Origin: Leucoraja erinacea
Taxonomy: Eukaryota
Reading direction: 5' to 3'
Assembly (NCBI RefSeq): GCF_028641065.1
Contig: NC_073400.1
Span: forward strand, 31,992,001 to 32,056,000
Length of the DNA: 64,000 bases
Part shown: piece after piece, positions 29,397-52,400 of the stretch
Numbering within the stretch: position 1 is the stretch's first letter
Layout: each line of letters opens with the position of its first letter
Notes under the pieces: model-generated
Told to the model about the DNA's origin: nothing
Database searches by the model: none
What the model saw: the letters and a program-made list of their open reading frames with translations, nothing else
Made by a program: the position numbers and the translations under genes

Positions 29397-31649
29397 TTAC
29401 AGTAGGGATCATAGCCCATAGTTAAACCAGAATCAGAGGTGCCACATTGACATGTGGAACTAAACCGGCATTGTTCTACTATTAATACTACTATCACTTA
29501 TGACCAAACCTGAACACAATACTGGGGAGAAAGCAGGAACAGGGTACTGATTCTGGATGATCAGCCATGATCAAGTTGAATGGCGGTGCAGGCTCGAAGG
29601 GCCTCATGGACTACTCCTGCACCTATTTTCTATGTTTCTACTGTCAAACAGTTTTATACAAGGTGTTATTACTGATTGAACAGGGTTTTTTTCAGTAGTG
29701 TTAAGGTTATTAATTTAGTGAAGTCTTTTGTTTATTATATGTTATCTATGAGTATTGTGTTGACATCCTGTTCTGCGGCTGCAGGTAAGAATGTAATTGT
29801 TCCATTGTTGGTACATATGACAATTAAACACTCTTTAAAGTTTAGTTTAGTGATACAGCATGGAAACAGGCCCTTCGGCCCACATAGTCCGCACCGACCA
29901 GCGATCCCAACACATTAACACTATCTTACACAACAGGAACAAGTTTTACATTTATACCAAGCCAATTAACCGTTACGTCTTTGGAAACCCACACAGGTGA
30001 CGGGGAGAACGTACAAACTCCATAGACTTGATGGGCTGAATGGCCTAATTCTACTATTCCTTATGACCTTATGATCAACAATCAACCATATATTAATTCT
30101 ATTCTACACACCAGGACATTTCTTGCACCTGCAGATCTTTGGAATGTGAGAGGAAACCAGAGCACCAGGAGGAAACCCAGGTGGTCCCAGGGAGAACATT
30201 TATAGTGGAGCCTATTTGGAGGTTGTTGTGTCTAATTGCGTGACGTTGTAGGCCTGGGCTATTGTAAGTATCTATGAAAGGAGATCTGTTGCAGAAGCTT
30301 TGCACTGACTGAACTATCTCTGCTACAAGTGTCTGCGCTCCATCAGAAATATCAATGGCTCCTCTCCCTGCAGCAGAAGAGGAGGGGGCAAGAGAAGACT
30401 TTGTGCTAACCACATTGATGGTATGTACGGTGATCTGAGGGACCCAGCCAACGTCTATCGATGCTTTAGAGGAGAAGCAATTGCACAATATTGTGCCCGT
30501 GGATTAGTGTTTGCCAAAGAATGTAAATATTGCAACAAGCTTGCCCTCTGAAATACTGCACATGCTCAAATATCAAACTCTAACAAATCAAACATTAGAT
30601 TCCACGTGTTGCAAATAAAAATGACACAAATTAATTGACTGGCAAATTATTTATTAAAATGATTTGTTAATTTGAAAGTTTGAGTGTGGAAGGAAACCGG
30701 AGAAAACCTACACAGGTCACGGGGAGAACGTGCAAACTCTGTACAGACAGCACCCGTTGTCAGGATCGAACCTGGGTCTCTGGCGATGTGAGGCAGCAGC
30801 TCTACCCGCTGCGCAACGTGTCTGCATTCCTTTCTATACAACCAACATTCGCATTCACTCCAGGATGCTCACTGTTCTCGGCTGTAAAACTGCATGAGCC
30901 TGGATAAGTGGCTGCCGACAACGTTGAAGGTCATGCTCTTTTTTGCTGACGGTGTTTGCTTGCTGATCATGACCTGCTGATATTCTGGCCGTCTTCTTTC
31001 GGTTGCAGAAAAAAACCCAATCAATAACATTTCAGCAGTGTCAATAGCCTTCGGGAGCACTCACTGAATGATGTGCTGATATTCCAGAAATTAAAAGGAT
31101 CAACATGTCCCTATTGGGTTTTTACTGTTTAGTCCAATACGCGGAGGCTACCAGTCCCATCCAGTCATGGGAAACATATCGCAATACGTCAGAGTCAACA
31201 CCAGTTGCTGGGTGACCTGACATTTCAGAGAGAGATGTGATCGATGGTCATGGCAAGGTGACCTTGTTTACAGTGGAGCAGACACAAAGACTTGTAGAGT
31301 TCGACAGCACAGAAACAGGCCCTTCAGCCCACTGAATCATCCTACCACAACTAAAGAGCAGTCCTGCTCTGCTATCTACCTCATTGGTGACCCTCGGACT
31401 ATCTTTGATCGGACTTTACTGGCTTTACCTTGCACTAAGCGTTATTCCCTTATCATATCTATACACTGCAAATGGCTCGATTGTAATCATGTATTGTCTT
31501 TCCGCTGACTGATTAGCACGCAACAAAAGCTTTTCACTGTACCTCGTGACAATAAACTAAACTAAATTCCGTCCACACTTTTATACCAAGAAAGACAAGC
31601 CTGGAACTTTTTGCCACTTGGATAATTCCACAGACTCACAAGACAGATA

Positions 31650-32607: not shown

Positions 32608-32632
32608 ATGGTAAAGATCATCTTCTGCGCTG
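32608..32632 (+). CDS. chitinase-like exon 1 (MVKIIFCA)
   Basis: 25 nt; AAGATGG Kozak and G|gtaag donor, same layout as chia exon 1. Confidence 0.75.
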
Positions 32633-35600
32633 GTAAGAATGACATTCAACTATATATCTGAACAATCAGAAGCTCGGTTAATGGCCTTAAACCTTGCAAA
32701 CATGATGGATTTTTTAATCAATTTCTTGAACTATCCTGCACAACTCTAATCCTACCCAACCAATCACTACGAACCACACCTTGCGCTACTGTGGACTTGT
32801 TTTCTCATTGCGTATTCTCGCCCCAATGTCTTCAGATTTATTTTTCCAGTCTTTTTATTTTTCACCATCTTGTAGAGTGCTCCAGTTTTCTCCCACATGC
32901 CAAAGATGTGCGGGTTTGCAGGTTAATCGGCCTTGGTATATTGTCTCTAGTGTGTGGGGAGCCGGTGCAAAAGTGGGAAAACATAGAACTATTGCGAACC
33001 GTTGATCGATGGTCGGCGTGGACTCGGTGGGCCACAGAGTTTCCATGATATATCTTTCAATCCATTCAATTTATACCTCATTTATGTGCAATTCATCTAA
33101 TGTTTATATATGTTTTTGTCTGTTGTCTGAGTCCAAGTTTTTCTATATTTTGTTTCTATTATTTCAGTGGGATTCCTGCTGTTGTTACAAGCATACAATG
33201 GTAAGCAGCATGCACTGAATGTATCCCATACCAACACCATGAATATTTATGCCGTCATCGGTCAAAGTTAATCAAATAGCTGTCGTTTGTGGCAGAGTGA
33301 AAATCTCAAATACAGGTGTTGATAGCAATTTACTGTAGATCACAGTGAATGGCGGTGCTAGCTCGAAGGGCCAAATGGCCTCCTCCTGCACCTATTTTCT
33401 ATGTTTCTACGTTAATCATTGTACGAAAATACTTTCATTTATTGAGCACAATACTGGGGGTGGGGAGATTGCAACCTTCACGTGGTCCGCCCTGTTTCGA
33501 TTAATGCAATCAATCCGACGGGCACAGTCAAATAAGATCAAATAGAACAAGTTGTCCGACAACTTTAGGCTGTGCACACCATACGCAAGGGGATGAAGAA
33601 GAAGCACAAAGGTACACAAAATTGCTGGAGAAATTCAGCGGGTGCAGCAGCATCTATGGAGCGAAGGAAATAGGCAACGTTTCCGGCCGAAACCCTTCTT
33701 CAGACTGAATTAAGAAGAAGCACAATACTGGAGAACACAGATAGGTGACGATTTGGTGTAAGATTATTCTTCGGAATGAGCTTTGAAGCTGGGTCTCGAC
33801 CTATCCATGTTCTCCAGAAATGATGCCTGACCCGCTGGGTTACTCCAGCACTTTGTCTCTTTTTGTGTAAACCAGCATCTGCAGTTCTTTGTTTCTGCTT
33901 TCATTTACACAAAGGCTATCTGCCAGTAGAAAATGCTTCCATTTCGAAGCTTCAAATGGGTTTTCTAATTGTATTTGATAAAAAAATCAACTGACAACTT
34001 TTTTTAAACCAGTTTTAAGCCAGGACTACAAGATAGTTTGTTACTACACAAACTGGGCACATAAACGAGGAAACTGCAAGTTCCTACCAGAAGATATCAA
34101 CCCCAAGTTATGTACACATCTGGTCTATGCCTTCGCTGTTATTGGCAAGAACCATGAAATGGTCCCACAGCAGACAGAGGATGAAAGCCTCTACGAGTCG
34201 TTTAATAATCTGAAAAAACGGTACGTGAATTTACGAGACCTTGCAATGATTGTTAACTTAAATGTTTAATTCCACTGCAAATCTCTTCACAAGAAACTAT
34301 CACAATCAGTTGAGTGCAGGGGGATGAGGGGTGATCTCATTGAGGTGGATAAGATTATGTGAGGAATAGAGATGCACAGAGTCTCTTGCCGAGAGTGGTG
34401 GAATCGAGGACCAGAGGACAAATGTTTAAAGTGAAGGGGGAAAGATTTAATAGGAAGCTGAGGGGTAACTTCCTCACACAAAGGGTGGTGGGTGCATGGA
34501 ACAAGCTGCCAGAGGAGGTAGTTGAGGCAGGCACTATCCCAACATTTAAGAAGCAGTTGGACAGGTGCATGGATAGGACAGGTTTAGAGGGATGTGGACA
34601 AAGTGCGGGCAGGTGGGACTAGAGTGGCTGGGACATGTTGGCCGGTGTGGGCAGTTTGGGCCGAAGGGCCTGCTTCTGCACTGTATCACTCTATGTCTAT
34701 CTCACTTTTTGTTTAAATGAGGAATTGGTTTTCAAAATCTATGCAGGAAATTACCATCAGCTTAATATTAAATATATGTATGAACATATTGTACTGTGCA
34801 GAAATGAGTCTAAAATAATGAGAGGAAATCTCTCACGAGAAAGGTTTCCGTGGTAACCATTAAGTGTCCTGTTAAAACAGTTAAGAGTTCAATACTGAAA
34901 CTAATTAGTTAGTGTTGGCAAATAGAACTTTTTTTTTTCATAATTCACAATTGCATTAAACCACTGTGGATTTATCCATCTTTAGTCATTTCCAATTCCC
35001 AAGCCTCCTTTAGTTTAGTTTGGTTTAGAGATATAGCGTGGAAACAGGCCCTTCGGCCCACCGAGTCTGCACCGACCAGCAATTCCCACGCATTAAGACT
35101 ACCTTACCTATACACACACTAGGGACAGTTTACACTTAAACCAAGCCAATTAACCTACAAACCTGTAAATCTTTGGAGTGCGGGAGGAAACCGAAGATCT
35201 CGAAGAAAACCCACGCAGGTCACGGGGAGAACATACAAACACCATGCAGACAGCACCCATAGTCAGGATCGAACCCGTGTCTCTGGAGCTGCAAAAATCT
35301 GTAAGACAGTGCGGCCCAAAATTCTGATTTATTCAATTACTTAAATTTAAATTTTGTACTGGCTATAGTGGGACTTGAACTCATATCCCTGGATCAATAA
35401 TCCAGCTCCCAGTCCACTCATTTAACTGTTCTCCCCGTGACCATGTGGGTTTCCTCCTCGTGCTCCGGTTTCCTCCCACTCCAAAGACACGCAGGCTTGT
35501 AGATTGAAGTCGGGTTTCGGCCCGAAACGTTGCCTATTTCCTTCGCTCCATAGATGCTGCTGCACCCGCTGAGTTTCTCCAGCAATTTTGTGTACCTCAG

Positions 35601-38600
35601 GCTTGTAGATTAATTGGCTTCTATAAATTGTCCCCAGTGTGTGGGATAGAACAAGTGTACGGGGTGATCGTTGGTCTGAGCAGACTCGGTGGGCCGAAGG
35701 GCCTGTTCCCACGCTATATGCCGAATGGCCTACTCCTGCACCTAATTTCTATGTTTCTATGTTTCTATATCTCTAAAACTAAATAGATATGACGAATGTA
35801 CAAATATGCAGTCTGTATGGACTCCATGTAGATGGGGTTTACGTGTGTGCTTGTGTTATCCGTCTTAAATGGAATCTAAAAGAGTAACTTTACCCATCAG
35901 CGTGTTATTTATTGGGTAAAGGACATGGAAACTGTAGCTTCAGACGGAGGCTGTTCCAGCTACCTTGTGTTGTTACTTCACAGCACTTCAACGTGGGCTG
36001 GGCCATAGAAAGCACTTCAGAGAATTGTTGTACTGACCTCCAAAAATGAAAAGTTGTTGATGGAGTCAGATTTATTTTTCATGCCTTTGTGCTTTTTAAA
36101 AAAAAAAATAATGTCCTCTGATTTCCACAGAAACCCAAACTTACGAACACTCTTATCCATTGGAGGCTGGAATTTCGGAACTGAAAAGTAAGGCTCTTTC
36201 TTGAATGAAATTTGAGAGAGAGCGCTGCCTTACAGCGCTGGACACACGGGTTCGATCCCGACCGAAAGTGTTGTCCATGTGGAGTTTGCACGTTCTCCAT
36301 GTGACCATGTAGATTTTCTCCGGGGACTCAAGTTTCCTCCCTCATCTCAAAGACATGTTGGATTAAAGGATACTCGGCCCTCTGTAAATTGCCCCTGGCG
36401 TGTAGGGAGTGGATGAGAAAGTGGGATCACATAGAACTCGTGATCGATAATCGGCCTGGACTCGGTGGGCCGAGGGGACTCTTTCCATTTTAGTATCTCT
36501 AAATTAAACTGATGACTGGGTCAATGACCACAAGAAAATACAGAACTATCCCAGATTGTGTGCCAGTAGATATGTATGCAATCAAACCTGTCTGCTTAAC
36601 TGAGTAAAAGAGTTTAATAGATCACACTGAACTTTCGAAGACAGATAAACTGGATGTTTATTTTTATCACGTGATAAAATCCAATCATATCAGATAACAA
36701 ATGAACGCATCTATCCATGTACATATTGGTTTACAAAATTAATCCTTCAAAATGCCTAACTTTCATGGATTTGAAGTTTATTACATGGGTTTCTGTAATA
36801 AATGATCTGGAGTGAAACACAAAGCACTGGAGGAACTCAGCAGGTCAGGCAGCATCTGTGGAGGAAATGGTCAAACAATTCACACAAATTCATTCATGTC
36901 ATACACAAGTACTGCAAGAACATAAAACATAGGAGTAGAATTAGGCCATTCAGCCCATTGGGTGTACAATAGTGATGGAAGGAACTGCAGATGCTGGTTT
37001 ACAACAAAGATACACACAAAATGCTGGAGTAACTCAGCAGAACAGGCAGCATCTCTGGAGGGAAGGAATGGATGAGGTTTCAGGTCGAAACATCGCCCAT
37101 TCCTTCTCTCCAGAGATGCCGCCTGTGTTACTCCAGCTTTGTGTCTATCCATAGTTCGACAGGTTGAGCAAAGAGAAAAATACCAGGGTGCAGAATATAG
37201 TTTTTCAGCATTGTAACGTAACAGTTCCAGAGAAAAAGTCAACTGTAGCAATGAGGTAGGTTGGAAAATGGGGACAGTGCCCCAGCTTATGGAAGAAAAT
37301 AAGATCAGAGTCTGGTAGTGACCCCTTTCAAGCTTCCGTATCATCTGCCCGACATTCAATCTCGTACAATAGGTGGAGCAAAGGGGGAGATAGAGTTCAG
37401 AATAGTTCTCAACATTGTAGCGCATCAGTTCCAGGGACAAAGTCCAATGTCCGCAATGGGGTTGAGATGAATCGGACAGTACTCTAGTTTATGAATGGAC
37501 CATTCAGAAGCGTAATAACAGAGGGGAAGAAGCCATTCCTCAGTCTGGGAGTGGTGATATCAGGGTTATATCACTGGTATATTTGGGTCACCTCAGTGGA
37601 TAACCGGTGAATGGAAAATAACAACCACTAAACCTCACTCCAGGGTCCCGACTCGAAACGTGGTCTGTCCATTCCCTCCACGGATGCTGCCAGACCCGCT
37701 GAGTTACTCCAGCACTTTGTGTTTCTCTCCAGATCGTTTATTACAGAAATAAGAAACTTCAAATACTCAAAGTCTGGCATTTTGAAGGATTAGTTTTGTG
37801 GAATAGCAGCGTACCGAGCAGCCATCAGGGGCCGTGTGTGTTGTCAGGTGGGGAATATTTCACTATTATCCATCTGCTGAGTTTGGAAAACTCAATTTTG
37901 AAAGGACTTGTAAAATTAAAAAAAGACACAAAGTGGCGAAGAAACCATATAACCATATAACAATTACAGCACGGAAACAGGCCATCTCGGCCCTACAAGT
38001 CCATGCCGAACAAATTTTGTTCCCCTTAGTCCCACCTGCCTGCACTCGTACCATAACCCTCCATTCCCTTCTCATCCATATGCCTATCCAATTTATTTTT
38101 AAATGATACCAATGAACCTGCCTCCACCACTTCCACTGGGAGCTCATTCCACACCGCCACCACTCTCTGCGTAAAGAAGTTCCCCCTCATATTACCCCTA
38201 AACTTCTGTCCCTTAATGTAGCGAAACGTAGTGAGTCTCTCAGCAACATGGAATGGTGATGTTTCGGGTTGGGATCCTTCTTCAGACGTTACAGTGGTGG
38301 GGGGGGGGGGGGGGGGGCTGGATGAGGGTAGTGGGGCATGACAAAGCCTGGCAAGTGCTAGGCAGGAAAATTCTGGAGTAATTCAGCGAGTCAGGAAGCA
38401 TCTGAGGCGAATATGGATAAGTGACATCTTGGTTTGGACACTTCTACAGATGGATTGTTGTGAGGGGAGAGTGATGGGTGGATACAGGTGAAGGCATCCA
38501 GGACAGAAAGGTCAGTAGGGGATGAGAAGGGGAGTTAAAATGGTTAGCAACCAGGAACTCCAGCAGAGCCAAGAGTTCTAGTAAAAAATAAAACATCCTT

Positions 38601-41600
38601 CTCAGCCATTTATCACAAGGCCAGAAGCTTTATGCATGAAGATTATGCTGACTACCTCCTTCCCAAACATATTTCATGTCAGGTTCACCGCCATGGTTTC
38701 CAGTAAAGAAACTCGCTTACTATTCATTACGTCTGCGATCGAGCTTCTGAGGAAAGCGGAGTTTGATGGTTTAGACCTGCACTGGGAGTTCCCCGGCTTT
38801 AACCGCAGCCCACACGAAGACAAGCAACGCTACACTGACTTGGTCCAGGTGAGTGTAGACTTGGTTTATACTCTCTAGAATTTAGAAGATTGAGAGGGGA
38901 TCTTATAGAAACTTACAAAATTCTTAAGGGGTTGGACAGGCTAGATGCAGGAAGATTGTTCCCGATGTTAGGGAAGTCCAGGACAAGGGGTCACAGCTTA
39001 AGGATAAAGGGGAAATCCTTTAAAACCGAGATGAGAAGAACTTTTTTCACACAGAGAGTGGTGAATCTCTGGAACTCTCTGCCACAGAGGGTAGTTGAGG
39101 CCAGTTCATTGGCTATATTTAAGAGGGAGTTAGATGTGGCCCTTGTGGCTAAGGGGATCAGGGATCAGGGGTATGGAGAGAAGGCAGGTACGGGATACTG
39201 AGTTGGATGATCAGCCATGATCATATTGAATGGCGGTGCAGGCTCGAAGGGCCGAATGGCCTACTCCTGCACCTAATTTCTATGTTTCTATGCGAGCTGA
39301 ACGCATCACAAATCTCGAGACACAAGGAACTTGTCTGGACAAAGTTTTTACACAGAGGGTGGTGGGTGCCTGCAACGTGCTGCCAGGGGTGGTGGTGGAG
39401 GCAGACACGGCAGTAACGTTCAATAAAGAATCTGGAGAGAAACACAAAGTGCTGGAGTAACTCAGAGGGACAGGCAGCATCTGTGGAGGGAACGGACAGC
39501 CGACATTTCGGGTCGCCACCCAGAAGTGAGGTTGTAAAACGTTCAATTCATGACAGGCACATGGATATGCTGGGAATGGTGGGATATGGATCACGTTCAG
39601 GCAGAGATTAGTTTAACTTGGTATAGTGTCGGCACTGAAATACTGATAGATTTCCAAATGGAATCGGGATGCTAAAAGGTGGAGCAGTTTCCAAATGGAG
39701 CAAAGAGTTTCCATATACTCTTCACTCAGAGGGTGGTGGGCAAAGATTCTACAGCGAGCAAGGTCGACCACTCGACGAGAAAGACTGCAGTACCATCATG
39801 GGCAAATTCGTGGGTAATTTTCGGCCCCATTTCCGTAACCGGCTTCCGTCTCCGCACCAAAGATCCCGTAGCGGAGCAAAGATACTAGTGCGGAGATGGA
39901 AGCCGGTTACGGAAACATCCTCGTAAAAATAAAAGTTCTTTAGCAAAAATCTTCTCCTCATTTTCAGAATATTAATTTATTAACACAAACTGTTCCCCCG
40001 CAACGTTGATTACACTGCGAGTCGGGTCGGGTTACTGGAATGGATGAAAAAAAGGCCCACGTTCCGCTCCGTTGCATACTACATGTCAGCCCATTGCATT
40101 TAGCAGGAGTGGTCTATCTTGCTCCGCTATAGGATCATTGGTGGTGGGTATATGGAATGAGCTGCCAAAGGAGGTAGTTGAGGCAGGGACTATAACATTA
40201 TTTAAAAGATATTGGGAGAGGTACATGGCTAAAAAAGGTTTAGAGGGATGTGTGGGACCAGCGTAGATGGGGCATCTTAGTCGGCATGGGCAAGTTGGAC
40301 TGAAGGGCCTGTTTCCACAATGTCTGACCCTCCGACTCAGAGTGGAACTTCAGTGACAAACAGCAAAGAGTCACCACACTCCCGCCCCATCTAGCCTTCT
40401 GGTCAGCTGAAACAAAGCATCTTTCCCAAGACCTTCGGCCTCTCCTTCACCCTGGGGCTGGCGTATTCCACAGGAAATAATGCAACCTAGTCATAATCAT
40501 TAATGATGAGAAACATTCCTATACATTCGCTCCTCTGTCACCAGGCAACTGAGCCGGCCTCTCACCAGCTAGAGAGTGGTCCTGACCTCCCAACCTCCTC
40601 GTTAGAGACCTTTGAACGATCTTTAATCGGACTTTACCTTGCAGTAGATGTTATGCCCTTTATCCTGTATCTGTACACTGTGGACGGCTTGATTTTAATC
40701 ACCTATAGTCTAATCAATGATTGGATAGCACAGAAAAACCACTTCATTGTACCTCAGTAAACATGACCATAATAAACTAAACTAAACCGTTTGAAATCTC
40801 AATTCCATTTTGGAAATCCATCCTTATTCCCATCTGTATCTGTTCTTGTGTATGGCTTGATTGGATTCAGGTATAGTGTTATGTAATTCAATGGAATAGT
40901 AATGACCATGTTCTTGGTTCTTGGTTTCTTGGTCCTCCAAAATATTCCAAATGGAATTTAAACTGGAGGTGGTGAAGGGAGGGATTAAGCCAGAAAGGGT
41001 TATTGGGAAGAAAGAGCTACTTTAAATGTAGTTGCATCTGGTTGGGTAACTATAGTAGGGTGGAGATTATTCCATGCTTTAATTGTGCGGGGGAAGAACG
41101 AATTGCTGTATACATCTGTCTTTGTAGCTGGGATCACAAATTGGATCGAATGCCCTCGTCTTCTCCATGTTAATTATATATTCATTAAGTCCATGCCATT
41201 TGTAATCTGTCGTTCATCAGATATCATTGATGTCATCTGCCTGACAAACTCTTCACTATTTTATTAACTAATAGGAACTCCAGGAAGAATTTATAAAGGA
41301 ATCAAACGAGACCAACAAACCACGATTGCTACTTTCTGCTGTTGTAGCATCTGGAATAAGAAACATTCAAGCAGGTTATGAAATAGAGAAGATTTCAGAG
41401 TACGTTGGGAGTTTATTTTGTACCTGGTGCGGCTTTAAGCTTTGAAGATGTTCATCGTAAAACTGAAAACAATGAGGAAAGACACAAAGTGATGAGTAAA
41501 TCATCGGGTCAGGCAGCATCTCAAGAGAGCATGGATATGTTATGATTTGATCGAGACCCTTCCTCAGACTGATGAAGGATCCCATCCTGAAATGTCACCT

Positions 41601-44600
41601 ATCCATGTTCACCACAGATGCTGCCCGACCTGCTGAGTGGCTCCAACACTGTCCTTGGTAAACCAGCATCTTCAGTTCCTTGTTTCTACTGAAAATAATA
41701 ACCACGGCTTTGAATAAGGGCCAAGGCGTTACAAAACTATCCAATGAACACTTCAAACTGGGCAGGAGACACAAAGACATTTGCAACCAAGGAAAAATAA
41801 TTGAGAACAAACTTATAAACCACTATGGTGGCAATATTAGTAATGCAAGAGGAGAGGGAGTGATGTGGTGAAAGGACCAGTGAAATGGAGACACAAGGAA
41901 CTGAAGATGCTGCGATCTTGATTAAAACACAAAGTGCTGGAGGAAGTCAGCACATCAGGCAGCATCTGCGGAGGGAATAGATGTTTTGGGTCAAGACCCT
42001 TCTTCAAACCAGTGAACTGGTTGGGTTGGCAATAACTGGCTAGATGGATCTATACGGATCAATTACATTCTAATTTCCTATATAAGATTGACCAGAAGAG
42101 CCAAGGAACTGCAGAAGCTGGAATCTTGAAGGGTTTCGGCCCGAAACGTCGCCTATTTCCTTCGCTCCATAGATGCTGCTGCACCCGCTGAGTTTCTCCA
42201 ACAATTTTGTGTACCTTGGAGGAACTCAGTTGGACAGACAGCATCTGTGGAGGGAATGGGCAAGCAATGTTTTGGGTTGAGACAGTCTGAAGAACATCAT
42301 CTGTCCATTCCCTCTACAGATGCTGCCTGGCCCGCTGAGTGCCTCCAGCACTTATGTTTTGATGAAGATTGAAAGATAACCGTGGTAAATGCTATTGTCA
42401 ATCTTTGCAGCCGTGATATCAATGCCTGCAATAGCAACCTCCTTCAGTTCCATTCTCAACTAGCTGTTGTTTTTTGCAGACACATGGACTTCATCGGTGT
42501 GATGACCTACGAGTTCCATGGTCCATGGGATCTAAAAACTGGACCTAACAGTCCACTGTACAAGAGCTCTGATGACTATAATGATGACAGATACTTCAAT
42601 GTAGTATGTACTGACATCTTTCATGATTTCAATTTACATCATTTCTCCAGTTCTCTAAAGTTTAGTTTAGTTTAGAGATACAGCGTGGGAGGTACAGTGA
42701 GGCCCTTCAGATCGCTATGTCCATGCTTGACTGGCGATACGCTAGTTCTAGCCTACACACGAAGGACAATTAACCTACAAACCTGCACGTCTTTGGAATG
42801 TGGGAGAAAAATCACGCGGATAACATACGAACTCCATACAGACAGCACCCATAGTCAGGATAGAAACCGGGTCTCTGGTGCTGTCAGGCAGCAACTCTAT
42901 CGTTGCGCTACTTTGCCAATGTACATTTGGGAACACAGAGAATGAATGAATGAACGAATACTTTATTGCCACATGACAAGTCACAGTGAAGTTATTTGTT
43001 TCTGCATACGCCAGGTATGCAAAGAGTGGCCACATAAAGTGCAGCAACAAAGTTACAAAGTATCCCGCCCCACGCCCTCCTTTGTTCTCTCCAAAATGCT
43101 GCAGCTGGAATGTGTGGTGGGATCGGGACAAAGCCTGGAAAGTGATAGGTGGATACAGTTGAGGGGAGGCTTACTGGTTACTACATGGTTGGACAAAAGC
43201 CCAGAGATGAAAAGACAAAAAGTGTGAGATAAGGAGATAAGCATAGAAGAGTCAAGAATTGTGAAGCCAGAGGAAGAAATATATTTGAAATGGGAGAAGG
43301 AAGAGGAGAAATGGGTGTGTATCCAGGCGGGGCACAGGGAAGAGAGATGGGGTGGTGAAAAAAAAATGGAAGTGGGTGTTAGTAGACTAGTTACCTGAAA
43401 TTGGAAGTCAATATTCATTGCATAGGGTTGGAAGATACCCAGGCAAAGTCAGTTCCAATGTAATCCTTTCTCGTAGGAGTTTGCAACAAATTACTGGAAG
43501 CAAAATGGAGCTCCGGCAGAAAAGCTCTTGGTGGGATTCCCAACGTACGGACGGACATTTACTCTCTGCTCTGCCGACAACAAGCCTGGTTCTGCAGCGT
43601 GTGGACCTGGCACTCCGGGGAACTGCAGCAAAGCCGCTGGCATTTTAGCATACTCTGAGGTACGGTGTGACTGCAGTTTGACCCTACTATGAAAGGGAAT
43701 GCACTTCAATTATCACTACTAATTGCCACCATCACTAGCAATCGACACATTAGGCCCCTCTTGGAAATATGTAGATTTATCATAGCAACATCTGCATGAA
43801 AAGACATTTGGGCAGGTACATGGATAGGAGAGCTGGGAGGGATATGGGCCAAACGCGGGCAGGTGGGACTAGTGTAGTTACATAGAAACATAGAAATTAG
43901 GTGCAGGAGTAGGCCATTCGGCCCTTAGAGCCTGCACCGCCATTCAATATGATCATGGCTGATCATCCAACTCAGTATCCCGTACCTGCCTTCTCTCCAT
44001 ACCCTCTGATCCCCTTGGCCACAAGGGCCACATCTAACTCCCTCTTAAATATAGCCAATGAACTGGCCTCAACTACCCTCTGTGGCAGAGAGTTCCAGAG
44101 ATTCACCACTCTCTGTGTGAAAAAAGTTCTCCTCATCTCGTTATCCCTCATCATCTCCTCATCATCTAGTTGGGACATGTTGGTCGGTAAGTTGGGCCAA
44201 AAGGGCCTGTTTCCACTCTATGATTTACTTATCACAGTGACACAGTTCTCATAGAATCATAATTACACAGCACAGATACAGCCCTATCGGCCCAACCTGC
44301 CTATGCCAACCAGAAGCCCCATCTACGCCAATCCTGCCTGCCCGCCTTTGGCCCATATCCCAGTAAACATTTCCTATCCATGTACCTGTCCAAATGTCTT
44401 TGAAATCTTGTTATTGTGTCTGCCTCAACTACCTCCGCTAGCAATTCGTTTAATTTACCCACCACCCTGTGTGTGAACATTTCCAAACCCTCTATCTTCT
44501 TCCATAAACCAATTGTGTATCCAGGGAGCAAGCTCACTCTGGCTTCCATGCGATCTAACCTTATAAAATGGAAATGTTATCATTATAAATTTACCAAAAC

Positions 44601-47600
44601 AATTATCATAACAGTACCTCTCCACCATCGAAGGGATTGACAGGAGGCTTTGTCTCAAAAACGCAGTCAGCATCATCAGAGACTCTCATTTCAACCCTGC
44701 CGTCGGGAAGAAGGTACAGGAATCTGAAAAACCATGACCTCCAGGTTCAGGAACAGCTTCATCCCAACAAACATCAGGCTCTTGAACACTGCAACCACCG
44801 ACTAAACTAAGAATAACATATTGTCTTGGTTACAGGAAATTTTTGCTTTTGTTTTTACACAAATATTGCCATTTTTTAGTTTATTATGTTATCTATGAGT
44901 ACTGTGTTTACAGACCTGATATGTTTCTGCAAGTAAGAAGGGTCTCGGCCCGAAAGCATCACCTATCCATGTTCTATAGAGATGCTGCCTGACCTGTTGA
45001 GTTCCTCCAGCACTCTCTGAAACGTCACCTATCCATGTTCTCCACAGATGCTGCCGGACCCGCTGAGATACTCCAACAAGCTGTGTCATTTTTAGATTTT
45101 CATTGTTCCATTGTTGGTATTTATGAAAATTAAACACTCTCGAATCTTGAATGTCCAGTGAGGTGGAGATAAAATAACAACTATCAACAAAATAACCAGG
45201 AACATTTACATCCTCCCTGTGGAATTCTAGTAATATTAAAGAGGTCACCCCTCGTAATACATTTCCAAGGGGACACGGGCTGCATTTATGTAGCATCTTT
45301 CACTCACCGTGAAGCACTTTGAAGCAATGATAAAGGTCTTTGCTATTATTACAGGTGTGTGACTTTTTGAAAGGAGCCCATAAAGAATGGATTGAGGAAC
45401 AGGAGATTCCATACGCATACAAAGATGATGAGTGGGTTTCTTATGACAATTTGAGGAGCTTTGAGAAGAAGGTATGTATTTTTTTGGAACATTTATTGCA
45501 TGTTCCTGATATATCTTGTATAATGGATTGCAGATGTGCAGTTTACATGGTCTCCTTTTAACTGTAGGGAATTCTTCCAAGTGCTCCAGTTACATAGAAC
45601 AGCACAGCACCAGACCCTTCAGCCCACAATCTCCGTGCTGGACATACCAAGTTAAACTCTCTCTGCCTGCACATTATTTTCCTCCCGTATCTGAAAAATT
45701 GCTGCATGAGGTGGATTGGCCACTGTAGTTAGCTACCATATAGGTGGCAGGCAGGTGGTGATCAGTATGCATGTGTGACTCAATGGGCCAAATGGCCTTT
45801 TTTTTTGTATGTCATGAGAAAACCAAGAGAAAATGAGTCCAGCTGGGCTATATAATGTGCACGGCAGGTGGTTTCAGTTGGCCAAGATATTTATTTCTTG
45901 AGAATGTGAAACCAAAACTAGTTTCAATGTTGATAACATTAAGTAATTCTCAAGAAATATATCCATCATTCTTGGACTTGTGTTAAAAATTATAATTTAT
46001 CCAAATGTTTTTCTTTGCAAGGATTGAAAAAATGTGGCCATTTATTTATTGCTATACAGCAACGGGTGAACAGGTGAAACCCCTCACCTGTGTTCACCTA
46101 TCACCATGTTCTGTCCTGCCCCTCATCTTTTCCCACTTTTGTTCCTGCCCCCACCCCCCCGTGCAATATGTCCGATAAAGGGTGCCGAACCGATACGTCA
46201 CCAGAGATGCTGCCTGACCCGCTGAGTTACTCCAGCACTTTGTGTCTTTCTTTAGTACAAAACAAGCATTTGTAGTTCCTCGTTATTGCCCTTTAAGAGG
46301 ATGTTCCCACTGTGGCGGGAAGTTTTGTCTCAGGCAAGGTTAAACATAGTTGCAGAAGCAAGGTCAGAAGATGGAATGAAGATTGAGATCAACCATCCAC
46401 TCGCTGAACATGTGGACTGGACATGTTTGTTACAGAGCCTCGTGAATTCATGCTTAATTTATGTAGTTTATGTATAAATTATGTTTTGTGCATTGCCTGA
46501 ATCTATGTAACTGTGATGCTGCTGCAAGCAAGATTTTCATTGCACCTCTACCTCACTGTATTTGTATCAGTATTGGTTAAATCTATCTGATCTCCAGGCT
46601 ACCACCTAAACCAGTCCGATTTCTCGGCTACTAAACATTTTAACCGCCCCTCCTCCCATTCCCACACTGACATTTCTATCCTGGGCCTCCTCCATTGTCA
46701 GAGTGAGGCCCAGCACAAATTGGAGGAACACCACCTCATATTTCGCTTGGACAGCTTTCACTCCAGCGGTACGAACATTGACTTCTCTAACTTCAAGTAA
46801 CCTTGCTTTCCCTCTTTCTCCATCCCTCCCTCTTCCCAGTTCTCCGACAGTCTTACCGTCACCCATTCCTTCTCTCCAGAGATGCTGCCTGTCCCGCTGA
46901 GTTACCGCAGCATTTTGTGTGTATCATTGGTTTATTATTAGAGATATACAAAATGTAGGAGTAACTCAGCAGGACAGACAATATCTCTGGAGAGAAGGAA
47001 TGGGTGACGTTTCGGACGTGTACTGAGATGCAGAGAAAAGCTTTGTTAATGTGACAATAAGCAGAACGCGACTTGACTTTTTGATTTTAGAGATAACAGC
47101 ACGGAAACAGGCCCTTCCACTCACCGGTTCTGCGCTGACCAACGATCACCCCGTACACTAGCGCTATCCTACACACTAAGGACAATTTTACAATTTACAG
47201 AAGGCAATTAACCTACATCCTTGGAGTGAGGAAACCAGAGCAGCCAGAGAAATACCACACGGTCTCAGGGACAAGGTACAAACGCCTAACAAACAGCACC
47301 CGTGGTCAGGATCGATCCCAGCTCTCTGGTGCTGTAAAGCAGCAACTCTACCATTGCACCATTTTGCAGCCGTATTGCTTAGGTAATCGGACAGCAATCA
47401 AGAACAATGTTTCTCTGGCAGTTTGTTTTGTGGCTTTTGGGGCTAATGTAAGCATCTAGAAATAAGGAACTGCACGAACTCAAGGAAATGAACCTTGGTC
47501 TCCATGTGACCTTGCATGGGGTCGGTCTTGTAAATCTGCAGCTAAATATTAATTATTAAATAATCTGGATTAGCGAGATGATTTGCAATCTAGGATACCT

Positions 47601-49411
47601 ATTAAATGTTAAATTATTTTCAGGTGGAATGGTTGAAAAATAACAGCTTTGGGGGTGCAATGGTATGGACAATCGATATGGATGATTATGAAGGTACTTC
47701 CTGTAACCAAGGACAATTCCCCCTTATTAATAAACTCAAGGTTATGCTTTCGTCAGGTTCTGGACCCACGGATGAATCGTCAGGTAACTAAATTACATTT
47801 CCATTTGCATTTCAAATCAAGATATTTACATTTTCTATCAAATATTTAAGCATTAATTATGCCATTATAATCATGCTGTCTACAAAACCTTTCTGGGTAT
47901 GCAATTTTGAAAATAATGGACATTTAATAAAATTAAAGAGTTTATTATAAGTTAATGCAGGAGGGAGACATGAGATGGAAGATCACAGCACTACAGGTGC
48001 TTGGAGTTCTGAAACAATAACAGAAAGTCGTCGCAGATCAGCTAGCATTTCAGATCTTGCTCCATTTATCAGAATCAGGAAAGTGACAAAACAAGAGAGG
48101 AGACAAAATAAACTGCAGATGCTGGATTCTCGAGTAAGACAGAAAGTGCTGAAGGAACTCAGTGGGTCAGACAGCATCTGTGGGTCTGTCCATTCCCTCA
48201 ACAGATGCTGCCTGTCCCACTGAGTTACTCCCCAAAAAGGGAGAACACAAGTTAGTTTTCGGCAGAAGACAAGCTCGGAGAGAGATGGAAATATCTTGGC
48301 AACCAAATGAGTTAATACAGCAGTTTGAAGCACATTTTGCTTCCTTGTCAATATGGGCAATATCGTTAATAGGTAGGCTCTGGGATATGCACAACAAGCC
48401 CGGGGGAAGTGGGAGGTTCACTTGCTGTTCACGTTTAGAGATACAGCGTGGAAACAGACCCTTTGGCAAACAGAGTCCAAGCTGACCAGCGATCATCCTG
48501 TACACTAGTTCTGCGTCCTACACAATTAACCGACAAACCTGCATGTGGGAGGAAACTGGAGAGCCCAGAGGAACCTTAGTGTGAATGGGTGATCAGTGGT
48601 CGACATGGACTTGATGGGCCAAAGGGTCTGCTTCCATGATGGATCCTTCAATCAACAGTGGAAATCCCAAATCTTTTTTCCCCCACCTACATGTGGTAGT
48701 GTGGGAATTTCCTGCAGCTCCCGGAACACAGGTTCAGACCAGGAGAGGCATCTTGAAACATTATCATCAGTGAGCTTTGCACCATCATCATGCCGATAAT
48801 GGATTAAGGTTACGCGTGAAGATATCGGTGTAGAGTTAATCATGTTGCTGTTCGTACTTTCAGAGACAACACCACTGCCCATTTCTTCATCAGATTCACA
48901 GGTATCCGACCCCTGCCCCAATCTGGAATTTTGCGGAGGTAAAAAGGATGGTAACTATGCAGTGGAGTGTACTGCGGACAGTTTCTATCAGTGTACCAAC
49001 AACGACACCGAGATTCTAACGTGCTCCAGAGGTACTTCATACAACGCGGGCAGAGACAAATGTGTCTGGCCACCCAGGTTAATTCCAGCCATCAATTTGG
49101 CAGACAGTAACTTTTGCAAAACCAAGCTCGACGGTGCATATGCAATCCCGGTTCCCTCGTACTACAAATGCAAAGCTGGGCAGATGCGCGTGAAGAAGTG
49201 CTCCTCTGATCTACTCTACGATGCAGTCAGCAAGAAATGCATCAGTGCAAACACATTTAGTGACTACGATGTGTCCTTCTGCAGTAGTAATGAAGATGGG
49301 ACCTATCCCATCCTTGGCAGACCAAACAAATACTATCACTGCCTGAATAAGGATACCAATGTAGGGAGCTGTCCCAAGGGGAGCTTCTACAATAATTTCT
49401 GTAAATGCTGA
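32608..49411 (+). CDS. GH18 chitinase-like protein (CHIA paralog) with Asp-to-His catalytic substitution and three tandem CBM14-like domains; 11 coding exons, about 581 aa
   Basis: Exons 32608-32632, 33168-33200, 34013-34220, 36131-36187, 38683-38848, 41275-41399, 42480-42603, 43477-43659, 45355-45471, 47624-47783, 48864-49411. All are GT-AG with the same phases as the minus-strand chia and form a 1746-nt open frame. AATAAA at 49435-49440. Confidence 0.9.
33168..33200 (+). CDS. chitinase-like exon 2 (signal peptide)
   Basis: VGFLLLLQAYN; tttcag/gtaagc boundaries. Confidence 0.8.
34013..34220 (+). CDS. chitinase-like exon 3
   Basis: DYKIVCYYTNWAHKRGNCKFLPEDINPKLCTHLVYAFA. Confidence 0.92.
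36131..36187 (+). CDS. chitinase-like exon 4
   Basis: [18 protein letters not shown]; 57 nt. Confidence 0.92.
38683..38848 (+). CDS. chitinase-like exon 5 (variant motif FDGLDLHWEFP)
   Basis: 166 nt; CAC (His) at 38780-38782. Confidence 0.93.
38870..39291 (+). mobile_element. CR1 LINE 3' end inserted about 20 nt downstream of the exon 5 donor
   Basis: 'LRGDLIETYKILKGLDRLD...' to the TTTCTATG tail. Confidence 0.85.
39741..40140. mobile_element. hAT-type MITE (400 bp)
   Basis: 8-bp TSD GTGGTGGG at 39733-39740 and 40141-40148; imperfect ~33-bp TIRs CAAAGAT...GACCACTC / GAGTGGTC...ATCATTG; splits a CR1 fragment. Confidence 0.8.
41275..41399 (+). CDS. chitinase-like exon 6
   Basis: ELQEEFIKES...PRLLLSAVVASG...AGYEI; 125 nt. 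Confidence 0.9.
42480..42603 (+). CDS. chitinase-like exon 7
   Basis: HMDFIGVMTYEFHGPW...TGPNSPLY; 124 nt. Confidence 0.92.
43477..43659 (+). CDS. chitinase-like exon 8
   Basis: EFATNYWKQNGAPAEKLLVGFPTYGRTF...LAYSE; 183 nt. Confidence 0.92.
45355..45471 (+). CDS. chitinase-like exon 9
   Basis: VCDFLKG...PYAYKDDEWVSYDN; 117 nt. Confidence 0.92.
46590..46925 (+). mobile_element. Penelope-like element 3' end (GIY-YIG C-terminus)
   Basis: 'HFN...SHSHTDISILGLLHCQSEAQHKLEEHHLIFRLDSFHSSGTNIDFSNFK*'. Confidence 0.8.
47624..47783 (+). CDS. chitinase-like exon 10
   Basis: VEWLKNNSFGGAMVWTIDMDDY...; donor G|gtaact (weaker alternative donor after 47756). Confidence 0.88.
48864..49411 (+). CDS. chitinase-like exon 11: S/T linker + 3 CBM14-like repeats
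   Basis: Three FC..K/E.DG.Y...Y.C...C...Y...C units at 48929-49069, 49112-49240 and 49277-49408. Confidence 0.9.
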
Positions 49412-52400
49412 ATCTAGCGTTACGTTGAAAGAGCAATAAAACTAATTTTGACAGTTGAACTCATTTCATTGGCTAGATCTTTGTGCACTAACACAAAATA
49501 ACGTGAGTATTTCTTGGTGTAATAAGGAACTGCAGATTCTGGATTAGACCAAAGTGCTGGAGTAACACAGCGGGTCAGGCTGGAGAAAATAGATAGGCGA
49601 CTTTTAAGGTCAGGACCCTTCTTCAGTCTGAATTGAGTCATAGTCACACAGCGTGGAAATAGGCCCTTTGGCCCAACTTGCCCACACCATCTATACTAGT
49701 CCCACCTGCCTGGCCCATATCCCTCTAAACCTGTCCTATCCATGTACCTGTCTAAATGTTTCTTAAATATTGCGATAGTACCTGCCTCAACTACATTCTT
49801 GGAAGCCAGCCAGTTCCAACCTTAGTGTGAAAAAGTTACCCTTCAGATTCCGATTAAATCCCCCCCCCCCCACAAACTTAAACCAAAGTCCTCTAGTTCT
49901 CAGTTCCCCTGCTTTGGGCAAGAGACTGTGCGCCTACCCGATCTATTCCTCTCATGATTTTGTACACCCTCATCCTCCTGCGCTCCAAGGAATAGAGTCC
50001 TAGCCTGCTCAACCTCTCCCACTCACCGAACCAAAAAGCTATATAAAATCGACAAAATCATCGTAGCTTTGTACAAAGGAACAATAAATACAACTAGTTC
50101 GTAGTTTGAAAGCAGCATTTGCTTACCCAGAAGAATCAAAGCTGGAAAATACGGATGAAACGAAGGAACAGCTGCTCAGCTACCAACAATGTTTATGGCG
50201 AGTGAACTATGACCTGGGCATGCGCAGTCGCAATACCGAACTTGCTTATTAAACGCCATCAAACATTTCTCAGCCCATCTGGCCAACCGTTCAATGTTAT
50301 GGGGGGGGGGGGGGGGGGGGGGGGAGAGAGAGAACAAAGGGACTGCCTCTGATAGGTAGTTCTCTCCACTGTTGGCCTGCTCTGCAATTTAAAACACTTA
50401 TTTTCTCCATTTATAGTTTTGTTGAGGGGTTCCCGAATGGTAATGTCAAGAATTAAATAAGCTTTCAACCTCCTAAAAGTTCACATTTATTGTTAAGATT
50501 TCCTACAATCTGGAGGTAGGATAAATAACTTTTCCAAATGGGAACAACATGAGAGGTGGTGACTGCCCAAGAATTCAGTTATTGAATGTTATGCAAGTAA
50601 ATATTTCACACACCACAACTTAAAATTGTAGCAAACCAGCTAAAACCATCTTACAGCTGCAGCACAGTGATGGGGGAATGTGGGGGGGGATAAATTACCA
50701 ACCTCATTGCTCCAATAACAGTAAACATTTGCCCTGCAGGTCGCAACGCTCGAAAAACCATCATCTTAATTCATTAAACATATCACTCAGTTCACCAGGC
50801 TTTTCTCACTGTATACAAAATCAACTCCACTTTTTTGGATACTTATGAAAGTTAATTCATCTGATCGTCGGCATATTAATGTATCAAATTGGATCCTGAC
50901 TATTTCATCATACACCTGACACTGAATAATCGACGTGTAAAAAAAAGTTAGAGTATAATTACTCTCCAGACTCAACGTATTTCTTCTTGGTGGATTAATA
51001 TTTTTGAGAATTAGAATTCATACTTACTGAATCGGTTCAAGTTAAACAGAAATGCACGTCATTTCTCATACAAAGGTGACTGTTATTCTACTGAGATACA
51101 AAGGAAAGTATAACAGAAATAAACAAAATATAGAAATATTGTTAGAACAAAGAACACATTTACACTGTTAACAAAATATACCAGGCATATACCAAGATGG
51201 ATTGAAGAAAGACACAAAATGCTGGAGTAACTCAGCGGAACAGGAGAGAAGGAATGGGTGACGTTTCAGGTCAAGACCTGTCTTCACACTAATCTGAAGC
51301 AGGGTTTAGACCCGAAACATCACCCATTCCTTCTCTCCTGAGATGTTGCCTATCCCGCTGAGTTACGCCAGCATTTTGTGTCAATCCTCAGTTTAAACCA
51401 GCATCTGCAGTTCCTTCCTACACGCACCGGATTATTCTATGAAGTCCTTCCAAGTTTTTAAAAATGTATAAACCATGAGATAACTTAAAATTATGATGGA
51501 AATCAAAACCAATACAATGTTATTTTGCAACCGGTACAGTCAATGAGTGAGATCTGCATAGGAAGGCAAACGTTTCAATGAAAACCTATTATTGCCAGCA
51601 CTCTCCCCAAAGTGACTATATTCTCTCCAAGTAGAGAGCCAGAACATTTTTCTCAGGATGGAAATGTCCAAGGCTAAAGGGCATAGCTATAAGGTGAGAG
51701 GAGGAAGTTTAATGGAGATGTACAGGGCAAGTTTTTTGTTTACACAGAGAATGGTGGCCCTGGAATGCATTGCAAGGGTGGTGGTGATGGTGGAAGCAGA
51801 AATGAAATTGGCATATTAGAAGCTTTTAGATACGCTCATGGAAGTGCAAGGAATAGAGGGTTTTGTATCATGGACAGGCAGATGAGATCAGTTTAACTTG
51901 GCATCATGTTCAGCACAAACAATGTGAGCAGAGGGGTCCTTTCCTGCACTCTATGTTCTAAGTGTGATTTATCTGGAGTTAAAATCTAACACTCGCAATA
52001 TCTGAATTTTTTTGAAGCACAATGCATTTTCCTGAAATTGTATTTAAAATAAACCCCATTAAACATAAATAATCTCAGAGAATATAGTTAGTCACTGACG
52101 AGTTGACACTTGCACTTGGTTCAGTCCGAAACACCCCCTGCATTGCAATGTACATTACACAGTAGACTGGCAAACATTTCAATAATATGATTTTACAGGA
52201 CAGCATCTGTGTAACAAAGTTATGACTGCAATCCTTCAAAAGCCAATGCAAAGCAGATGGTCTTCAATTCTGGTCAGAGTATTCTGTGCAGTTTAGAGAT
52301 GTGTTTATTGAAAAATAAAGCCCACTGGAATCAATATTGATAAAGAAGAAACAAATAAATGAACTACGAGTAATTCGCCTAAAGTAGTTGGGATTGGGTG

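What the first reader, a model, noticed from the sequence alone, without database searches (positions are those of the whole stretch)
48929..49408. Three tandem CBM14 (peritrophin-A-like) domains in a single vertebrate exon
Seen: three diverged repeats of FC-x3-(K/L/E)DG-x-Y...YxC-x9-C...Y...C inside one 548-nt exon. Established: vertebrate CHIA and CHIT1 carry one CBM14, whereas tandem CBM14 arrays typify arthropod peritrophins and obstructors that cross-link chitin fibrils. Repeats 1 and 2 lack the vertebrate CxC pair, repeat 1 has a possible extra Cys pair (DPCP, VECT), and only repeat 1 keeps the terminal Trp needed for chitin binding in CHIT1. Inference: an old intra-exonic triplication turned the enzyme into a multivalent chitin-matrix protein.
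Basis: partly seen in the sequence, partly recalled or inferred. Interest (0 to 1): 0.8.

Follow-up and report, generated by a model that had tools for sequence, protein, structure and literature searches.

The report
Shark-ray chitinase with three chitin-binding domains
The last exon of a little-skate chitinase-family gene encodes three chitin-binding-type (CBM14) domains instead of the usual one, and this layout is conserved in sharks, rays and a chimaera, so it is real and old, though whether all three domains bind chitin is untested.

Summary
Window 48864-49411 (+) is a 548-nt terminal exon, and each of its three repeats passes Pfam's CBM_14 threshold on its own.

It is spliced to GH18 exons. 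All 11 coding exons (32608-49411) match RefSeq XP_055510971.1 (Leucoraja erinacea, "acidic mammalian chitinase-like", 581 aa) exactly and in order.

The same GH18 + 3xCBM14 protein exists in at least 17 other sharks and rays and in the chimaera Callorhinchus. Each repeat forms its own clade that includes the chimaera, so the array predates the crown of cartilaginous fishes. All 15 tail cysteines are invariant in the 11 elasmobranch sequences aligned.

- The array is a hybrid. R1 and R2 have four core cysteines. R3 is chitinase-type but cut short before its last Cys and Trp, which leaves an odd cysteine count.
- Triplication in place is compatible with the data but not shown.
- The chimaera has the same tail with a near-canonical active site (DxDxE kept), so the tail did not convert the enzyme.
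- Tandem CBM14 arrays are not arthropod-only. Fishes and cyclostomes have them, and some teleosts carry them on GH18 proteins, independently.

I found no paper describing this architecture. The scan has noted this gene before on the same window.

The parts
32608..32632 (+). Coding exon 1 (ATG, start of signal peptide MVKIIFCA)
   Evidence: Exact match to XP_055510971.1 residues 1-8; donor G|gtaaga
33168..33200 (+). Coding exon 2 (rest of signal peptide)
   Evidence: Exact match to residues 10-19; tttcag| and |gtaagc
34013..34220 (+). Coding exon 3, GH18 (DYKIVCYYTNW ... CTHLVYAF)
   Evidence: Exact match to residues 21-88
36131..36187 (+). Coding exon 4, GH18 ([10 protein letters not shown])
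   Evidence: Exact match to residues 90-107
38683..38848 (+). Coding exon 5, GH18 catalytic motif, here FDGLDLHWEFP (Asp to His)
   Evidence: Exact match to residues 109-163; the same His is in all elasmobranch orthologues
41275..41399 (+). Coding exon 6, GH18
   Evidence: Exact match to residues 164-204
42480..42603 (+). Coding exon 7, GH18 (MTYEFHG, Asp to Glu)
   Evidence: Exact match to residues 206-246
43477..43659 (+). Coding exon 8, GH18
   Evidence: Exact match to residues 247-307
45355..45471 (+). Coding exon 9, GH18
   Evidence: Exact match to residues 308-346
47624..47783 (+). Coding exon 10, end of GH18 (GGAMVWTIDMDD) and start of linker; ends with 1 nt of a split codon
   Evidence: Exact match to residues 347-399; ttttcag|GTGGAA ... 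CGTCAG|gtaact
48864..49411 (+). Terminal coding exon (548 nt): Ser/Thr-rich linker, three CBM14 domains, stop codon
   Evidence: Exact match to residues 401-581; phase fits exon 10 (G+AG = Glu400)
48894..48894 (+). Alternative in-frame acceptor used by RefSeq isoform X2 (10 residues of linker lost; all three CBM14 kept)
   Evidence: P0295 vs P0296 alignment; tcatcag|
48905..49075 (+). CBM14 repeat 1 (protein 414-470): four core Cys, an extra pair (C417, C435) and Trp468
   Evidence: Pfam 36.9 bits; HMM envelope; AF2 pLDDT about 80-90
49088..49252 (+). CBM14 repeat 2 (protein 475-529): four core Cys, no CxC pair, no Trp
   Evidence: Pfam 29.4 bits; HMM envelope
49253..49408 (+). CBM14 repeat 3 (protein 530-581): chitinase-type with CKC, cut short before the sixth Cys and the Trp; most conserved repeat
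   Evidence: Pfam 25.2 bits; aligns to CHIT1 ChBD 6so0/5hbf; 81% mean identity among elasmobranchs
49435..49440 (+). AATAAA polyadenylation signal 24 nt after the stop codon
   Evidence: Sequence read directly

Best explanation
The region is the terminal coding exon of an intact 11-exon gene of the little skate (Leucoraja erinacea; RefSeq XP_055510971.1, 'acidic mammalian chitinase-like').

The product is a secreted 581-aa protein with four parts: a signal peptide, a CHIA-clade GH18 domain, a Ser/Thr-rich linker, and three CBM14 (peritrophin-A) domains. The orthologue group is found in cartilaginous fishes. The three domains were already distinct before chimaeras and elasmobranchs split.

Shown:
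- Domain identity and exon structure.
- Conservation of every cysteine in the tail.
- The hybrid make-up of the array. R1 has the two universal CBM14 disulfides, an extra Cys pair and the chitin-contacting Trp. R2 has only the two universal disulfides and no Trp. R3 is the chitinase-type domain with the CxC pair, but it ends before the sixth Cys and the Trp.
- An odd cysteine count (23 in elasmobranchs, 21 in the chimaera).

Inferred:
- The tail tethers the GH18 domain to chitin mainly through R1.
- R2 and R3 add avidity, or have taken on another conserved role, such as a different ligand or disulfide-linked pairing through the unpaired Cys569.
- The tail arose in an active chitinase. The elasmobranch active-site change (DxxDxHxE, YE) came later.
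- The target could be dietary chitin or the fishes' own chitin. The tissue of expression is unknown.
For: - Pfam CBM_14 hits all three repeats above threshold.
- GT-AG sites and splice phases are compatible.
- Every exon translation is found exactly and in order in XP_055510971.1. A second RefSeq isoform uses an acceptor 30 nt downstream.
- Orthologues of 556-588 aa carrying PF00704 + PF01607 and the full tail are listed for Chiloscyllium (2 species), Rhincodon, Heterodontus, Scyliorhinus (2), Mustelus, Heptranchias, Pristis, Hypanus, Hemitrygon, Mobula (2), Narcine, Rhinoraja, Amblyraja and Callorhinchus.
- All 15 tail Cys and Trp68 are invariant in the elasmobranchs aligned.
- R1, R2 and R3 are each a clade including the chimaera, with SH-aLRT 96, 96 and 99.
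- The GH18 tree places the group (support 100) as sister (95) to CHIA-type sequences.
- The AF2 model of the tail matches the CHIT1 ChBD (rmsd 1.0 over 49 residues), Der p 23, tachycitin, Avr4 and the three-domain EHEP.
- CHIT1 disulfide map and binding residues come from PMC4844120 and PMC5459812.
- Small 'RNA?' runs hold contigs confined to the exon with 1 mismatch each.
Against: - No read or contig spanning the 47783/48864 junction was seen. The one raw RNA run gave about one read, so splicing rests on RefSeq models and homology.
- The tissue of expression is unknown.
- No binding data exist. R2 and R3 lack the Trp, and R3 lacks one universal disulfide whose cysteines are each essential in CHIT1 (PMC4844120).
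- CBM14 folds such as EHEP and Der p 23 do not bind chitin (PMC10619976).
- The AF2 model is only moderate (mean pLDDT 67; R2 53-68). I could not read coordinates to check disulfide geometry.
Confidence: 0.8

Rival explanations
1. R1 and R2 were not copied from the chitinase's own domain. They were captured from, or share descent with, the 4-Cys CBM14 arrays of fish and cyclostome 'cbd-1-like' proteins and inserted ahead of the original domain (R3).
For: - R1 and R2 have the 4-Cys pattern and a C-terminal segment (YNAGRDKCVWPP, LYDAVSKKC) like Polypterus and lamprey repeats (YNAAGDFCDWPL, FNQRLGACVWPS).
- All 12 species score R1 and R2 5-6 bits higher on the 4-Cys profile, and R3 14 bits higher on the chitinase profile.
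- In Polypterus a 22-CBM14 gene lies next to a GH18 gene; the two are fused in one model.
Against: - The front two thirds of R1 score 8 bits better on the chitinase profile, and R2 is neutral.
- With long branches removed, the best tree puts R1+R2+R3 on one side of a branch, with no support.
- 57 alignment columns cannot resolve the question.
Confidence: 0.3
2. The protein is a non-enzymatic multivalent chitin-matrix cross-linker, a vertebrate counterpart of obstructors and peritrophins.
For: - Elasmobranch GH18 has DGLDLHWE and MTYEFHG.
- There are three CBM14 domains.
- The odd cysteine count could give covalent dimers.
- Cartilaginous fishes make chitin in the ampullae of Lorenzini (10.1101/687301).
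- Teleost GH18 proteins with 4-16 CBM14 have also lost the catalytic Glu (DGINLDWR, DGLNLDWR).
Against: - The chimaera has the same tail with the DxDxE core intact (NGLDLDWE), and the catalytic Glu is kept in all species.
- Only R1 has the binding Trp.
- There are no expression or binding data.
Confidence: 0.2
3. The exon is a separate small peritrophin-like gene, or a decaying relic wrongly joined to the GH18 gene by automated annotation.
For: No junction-spanning read was seen. A 189-aa ORF starting at an intronic ATG (48842) is called on short Logan contigs.
Against: - That ORF has no signal peptide, and its start lies upstream of a good acceptor.
- Splice phases fit.
- Independent models in at least 18 species, plus a UniProt chimaera entry, join the exon to the GH18 exons.
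- All Cys are conserved, which excludes decay.
Confidence: 0.03

Closest known systems
Vertebrate acidic chitinase (CHIA/AMCase) and chitotriosidase (CHIT1)
   Same: - Signal peptide, GH18, Ser/Thr linker and C-terminal CBM14 in the last exon.
- The GH18 groups with CHIA-type sequences.
- R3 aligns to the CHIT1 ChBD.
- A canonical paralogue with one CBM14 lies on the minus strand of the same window.
   Different: - Three CBM14 domains instead of one.
- R1 and R2 lack the C460-C462-type pair.
- R3 lacks the sixth Cys and Trp465.
- In elasmobranchs the motif reads DxxDxHxE.
Teleost GH18 proteins with several CBM14 (Channa argus XP_067381966.1, 4 domains; Siganus KAM3617867.1, 16; Esox XP_034146378.1)
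   Same: One polypeptide with GH18 followed by tandem CBM14 domains, and a degenerate catalytic motif.
   Different: - They sit in a separate teleost GH18 clade.
- All their repeats are near-identical 6-Cys chitinase-type copies, so they are recent.
- They are not orthologous, so the similarity is convergent.
Fish and cyclostome multi-CBM14 proteins ('chitin-binding domain protein cbd-1-like', 'chondroitin proteoglycan 2-like', 'mucin-like') of Polypterus, teleosts, lamprey and hagfish
   Same: Tandem CBM14 domains, many of the 4-Cys type that R1 and R2 resemble. They give the best total scores to the exon.
   Different: They have no GH18 domain, carry 7-22 repeats, and their repeats are homogenised within each protein.
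Arthropod obstructor/CPAP3 proteins and peritrophins
   Same: Secreted proteins with tandem CBM14 domains. From my own knowledge, obstructors have exactly three.
   Different: They have no catalytic domain, and each domain has the 6-Cys C1-C3, C2-C6, C4-C5 pattern. No close sequence kinship was shown here.
EHEP of Aplysia kurodai (PDB 8IN3/8IN6)
   Same: Three peritrophin-A domains in about 200 residues. It is the best Foldseek match to the tail model (E 5e-9).
   Different: - It is a stand-alone protein that binds phlorotannin, not chitin (PMC10619976).
- The overall rmsd is 16 A, so only the domains match, not their arrangement.
Insect group II chitinase (ChtII/Cht10)
   Same: A GH18 enzyme that uses several CBM14 modules (PMC11402056 title and abstract).
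   Different: It has several catalytic domains, an invertebrate-type CBM14, and a different lineage.

Membership tests
CBM14 / peritrophin-A (PF01607) | Profile match above the curated threshold for each repeat | tested here: met
   36.9, 29.4 and 25.2 bits against a 22.1-bit cut-off
CBM14 / peritrophin-A (PF01607) | The two universal disulfides (CHIT1 C420-C440 and C450-C463 equivalents): R1 and R2 | tested here: met
   All four Cys are present and invariant in R1 and R2; disulfide map from PMC4844120. Bond formation itself is not tested.
CBM14 / peritrophin-A (PF01607) | The two universal disulfides: R3 | tested here: not met
   R3 ends at CKC, or FRKF in the chimaera. The partner of Cys569 is absent in all species.
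CBM14 / peritrophin-A (PF01607) | Distorted beta-sandwich fold | tested here: met
   The AF2 model matches 5hbf, 6so0, 4zce, 1dqc, 6bn0 and 8in3. Model confidence is moderate.
CBM14 / peritrophin-A (PF01607) | Binding to chitin | not testable with these tools
   The Trp465 equivalent is present only in R1. EHEP and Der p 23 show that the fold does not guarantee binding.
Vertebrate GH18 chitinase, CHIA clade | GH18 domain and CHIA-type placement in a tree | tested here: met
   PF00704 at 328 bits in the orthologue; sister to CHIA-type sequences with SH-aLRT 95 (quick tree).
Vertebrate GH18 chitinase, CHIA clade | Catalytic motif DxxDxDxE | tested here: not met
   Skate and all elasmobranchs have DGLDLHWE; the chimaera has NGLDLDWE.
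Vertebrate GH18 chitinase, CHIA clade | A single C-terminal six-Cys ChBD | tested here: not met
   There are three domains with 6, 4 and 5 Cys.
Obstructor/CPAP3 and peritrophins | Non-catalytic protein made only of tandem six-Cys CBM14 domains | tested here: not met
   The tail is attached to GH18 and its Cys patterns differ.

The most novel reading that the evidence does not exclude
Cartilaginous fishes have kept, for over 400 million years, a dedicated GH18 protein whose hybrid triple CBM14 tail and conserved unpaired cysteine let it form disulfide-linked multimers. These multimers would organise the animals' own chitin, for example in the gel of the ampullae of Lorenzini or in a gut membrane. 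It would be a vertebrate analogue of obstructors, evolved in parallel with the teleost proteins that join a GH18 domain lacking the catalytic Glu to multiple CBM14 domains.
Probability: 0.12. Interest if true: 0.7.

Novelty: new variant of a known kind. Interest (0 to 1): 0.45.

Why it matters
Vertebrate chitinases are taught as one catalytic domain plus one chitin-binding domain. This is a conserved exception that spans a whole vertebrate class, with three non-equivalent domains.

Two further points raise its interest. Teleosts have independent GH18 proteins with multiple CBM14 domains, and fishes and cyclostomes have free CBM14 arrays. Together these show that non-tetrapod vertebrates hold a repertoire of multi-domain chitin-binding proteins, which fits recent evidence that they make their own chitin.

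The protein also offers a natural test of what each CBM14 feature contributes: the Trp, the CxC pair and the last disulfide. It is not a new kind of molecule, and the sequences are already in RefSeq under a generic name.

Tried and rejected
- Reads. No junction-spanning record was seen. Two small runs hold contigs only on the exon. One relative's contig covers intron plus exon at 95% identity with no indels in the exon. The one raw RNA run I laid had about one read.
- All-against-all ORF BLAST in the window. It was swamped by interspersed repeats and was replaced by motif and tblastn searches.
- CBM14 domain tree. The deep nodes are unresolved, so it cannot settle the origin of R1 and R2.
I therefore could not check that the tail is a single exon in sharks or the chimaera, nor check synteny.
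- Literature searches found no description of GH18 + 3xCBM14 in cartilaginous fishes.
Exons were handled one by one, and the public RefSeq protein was used instead.
- Rejected readings: a separate gene, or a pseudogene relic (see rivals).
Full report
**What is there**

Window 48864-49411 on the + strand is an open 548-nt stretch. It is preceded by a good acceptor (tgttcgtactttcag|AG) and ends in TGA, with AATAAA 24 nt further on.

Its translation (181 full codons from 48866) has a Ser/Thr-rich linker followed by three repeats of about 50 residues. Pfam CBM_14 (PF01607) matches at E 5.4e-19 with three stretches. Scanned alone, the repeats score 36.9, 29.4 and 25.2 bits against a cut-off of 22.1.

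- R1 and R2 lack the CxC pair.
- R1 has two extra cysteines (DPC, VEC).
- Only R1 keeps the Trp (CVWP).
- R3 stops at ...FCKC.

**Which gene it belongs to**

The window holds two GH18 genes. One lies on the minus strand (about 14973 down to 6974). It has the canonical [11 protein letters not shown] motif and a single six-Cys CBM14 (46.7 bits). The other lies on the plus strand and ends in the exon under study.

I placed the plus-strand exons by homology and splice sites. There are 11 coding exons, all GT-AG, totalling 1746 nt. Exon 10 (47624-47783) carries GGAMVWTIDMDD and ends with one base of a split codon. The terminal exon supplies the other two bases (G+AG = Glu).

Handled exon by exon, every exon translation is found exactly and in order in RefSeq XP_055510971.1, 'acidic mammalian chitinase-like isoform X1' of Leucoraja erinacea (581 aa). 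The terminal exon gives residues 401-581. The window is therefore little-skate DNA, and the gene is already annotated. Isoform X2 uses an in-frame acceptor 30 nt downstream (48894) and keeps all three domains.

The public protein served instead.

**Direct RNA evidence is weak**

- Two small runs of uncertain type hold contigs confined to the exon: 381 nt and 156 nt, with one mismatch each.
- A relative's contig spans intron and exon at 95% identity, with no indel in the exon.
- The one raw RNA run I laid gave about one read.
- No record crossed the junction.

**How widespread and how old**

An exhaustive HMMER search with the exon found one orthologue representative, a 585-aa Chiloscyllium protein. 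Its residues 407-585 align to the whole exon at 59% identity.

Word searches and cluster look-ups added full-length orthologues of 556-588 aa with PF00704 + PF01607. They come from Rhincodon, Heterodontus, two Scyliorhinus, Mustelus, Heptranchias, Pristis, Hypanus, Hemitrygon, two Mobula, Narcine, Rhinoraja, Amblyraja and the chimaera Callorhinchus (V9KD90 and XP_007897731.2, 582 aa).

In the alignment all 15 tail cysteines and the R1 Trp are invariant in elasmobranchs, and every protein ends CKC. The chimaera ends FRKF, so its R3 has only three cysteines.

In a tree of 122 CBM14 domains, R1, R2 and R3 are each a clade that includes the chimaera (SH-aLRT 96, 96, 99). The three domains were therefore already distinct before chimaeras and elasmobranchs split.

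Mean identity among elasmobranchs by region:

| Region | Mean identity |
|---|---|
| R1 | 67% |
| R2 | 65% |
| R3 | 81% |
| GH18 domain | 84% |

All three repeats are under constraint, R3 most of all.

**Anatomy of the three domains**

The CHIT1 domain has three disulfides: C420-C440, C450-C463 and C460-C462. The first two are shared by all CBM14 structures. The third is typical of chitinase-linked domains (PMC4844120). Alanine scanning shows Pro451, Leu454 and above all Trp465 to be key for binding (PMC5459812).

Mapped onto the skate protein:
- R1 keeps both universal pairs and the Trp (W468), and adds C417 and C435.
- R2 keeps only the two universal pairs and has no Trp.
- R3 keeps the first pair and the CxC pair. 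It lacks the partner of C569 and the Trp, because the protein ends there.

The mature protein has 23 cysteines in elasmobranchs (8 in GH18, 15 in the tail) and 21 in the chimaera. At least one is therefore unpaired or bonded to another molecule. The chimaera pattern points to C569.

An AlphaFold2 model of the tail (mean pLDDT 67) gives three small beta domains. Foldseek matches the three-domain EHEP (E 5e-9), the CHIT1 ChBD (rmsd 1.0 A over 49 residues), Der p 23, tachycitin and Avr4.

**Origin of the array**

Fish CBM14 domains fall into two types. One is a six-Cys chitinase type (...SCKCCxWP). The other is a four-Cys type (...xCDWP), found in Polypterus, stickleback and lamprey arrays.

Profiles of the two types score R1 and R2 5-6 bits higher on the four-Cys type, and R3 14 bits higher on the chitinase type, in all 12 species. 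Restricted to the first two thirds of the domain, R1 prefers the chitinase type by 8 bits and R2 is neutral.

With long branches removed, the best tree puts R1+R2+R3 together but with no support. Triplication in place followed by loss of the CxC pair, and capture of foreign repeats, both remain possible. I lean towards the former, about 2:1.

**Relation to the active site**

All elasmobranch orthologues read DGLDLHWE and MTYEFHG. The chimaera reads NGLDLDWE and MTYDFHG. The triple tail therefore predates the active-site change and evolved on what was probably an active chitinase.

In a quick GH18 tree the group (support 100) is sister (95) to CHIA-type sequences.

**Not unique among vertebrates**

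The highest total scores to the exon come from long CBM14 arrays of Polypterus, Siganus, Channa, lamprey and hagfish.

Among the 150 best hits, six contain GH18. Besides the two shark entries these are teleost proteins: Channa XP_067381966.1 (GH18 + 4 CBM14), Siganus (GH18 + 16; and 2 GH18 + 33) and Esox (6 GH18 plus many).

Those teleost proteins sit in a different GH18 clade. Their repeats are near-identical six-Cys copies, and the Channa and Siganus proteins have lost the catalytic Glu (DGINLDWR, DGLNLDWR). They are an independent, more recent invention.

**Function**

The safest reading is a secreted GH18 protein tethered to chitin through R1, with R2 and R3 adding avidity or serving another conserved role.

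Caution is needed, because EHEP and Der p 23 have this fold and do not bind chitin (PMC10619976).

Cartilaginous fishes make chitin in the ampullae of Lorenzini (10.1101/687301). Hagfish and ray-finned fishes have chitinous gut membranes (PMC6109156). An endogenous target is therefore conceivable, but nothing here links the gene to those tissues.

**Verdict**

I found no paper describing this architecture. It is a new variant of a known kind, of moderate interest.

Noticed in passing
window 30372-30551 (+): An isolated CBM14-like terminal exon (…LCANHIDGMYGDLRDPANVYRCFRGEAIAQYCARGLVFAKECKYCNKLAL-stop; Pfam CBM_14 28.2 bits) lies 2 kb upstream of the plus-strand gene's ATG. Its CxCC is degraded to CKYC and the Trp is lost. 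No GH18 exons were found upstream of it on that strand. It is probably the relic of a third chitinase gene.
   Followed up: partly
window 3119-3673 (-): An open frame with an immunoglobulin V-set domain (Pfam 35.2 bits, cut-off 26) lies downstream of the minus-strand chitinase. No CBM14 exon was found beside it within the window, so a VCBP-like layout is not shown. It is also mentioned in scan note s1-877129.
   Followed up: partly
window about 6974-14973 (-): A canonical CHIA-like paralogue ([18 protein letters not shown], one six-Cys CBM14 ending CKCCNWP) sits head-to-head with the three-CBM14 gene.
   Followed up: partly
proteins P0135, P0009, P0002, P0013 (Channa, Siganus, Esox): Teleost GH18 proteins carry 4 to over 30 near-identical six-Cys CBM14 repeats. 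In Channa and Siganus the catalytic Glu is replaced by Arg. These evolved independently of the cartilaginous-fish protein. Some may be fused gene models.
   Followed up: partly
protein P0160 (Polypterus senegalus KAG2467919.1): A 1692-aa model has 22 CBM14 domains followed by a GH18 domain with DGLDLNWM. This suggests that a multi-CBM14 gene lies directly beside a chitinase-like gene in the bichir.
   Followed up: no
window 48842-49411 (+): A 189-aa ORF starting at an intronic ATG (MLLFVLS…) is called as a protein on three short Logan contigs (937-973 nt). This is an artefact of ORF calling on unspliced or genomic contigs, not a separate gene.
   Followed up: partly
window, throughout the introns (e.g. 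48110-48250, 48430-48530, 49490-49600): Interspersed repeats reach very high depth in all runs laid, with inverted joints. They are typical SINE/LINE-like elements of the skate genome and flank the terminal exon.
   Followed up: no
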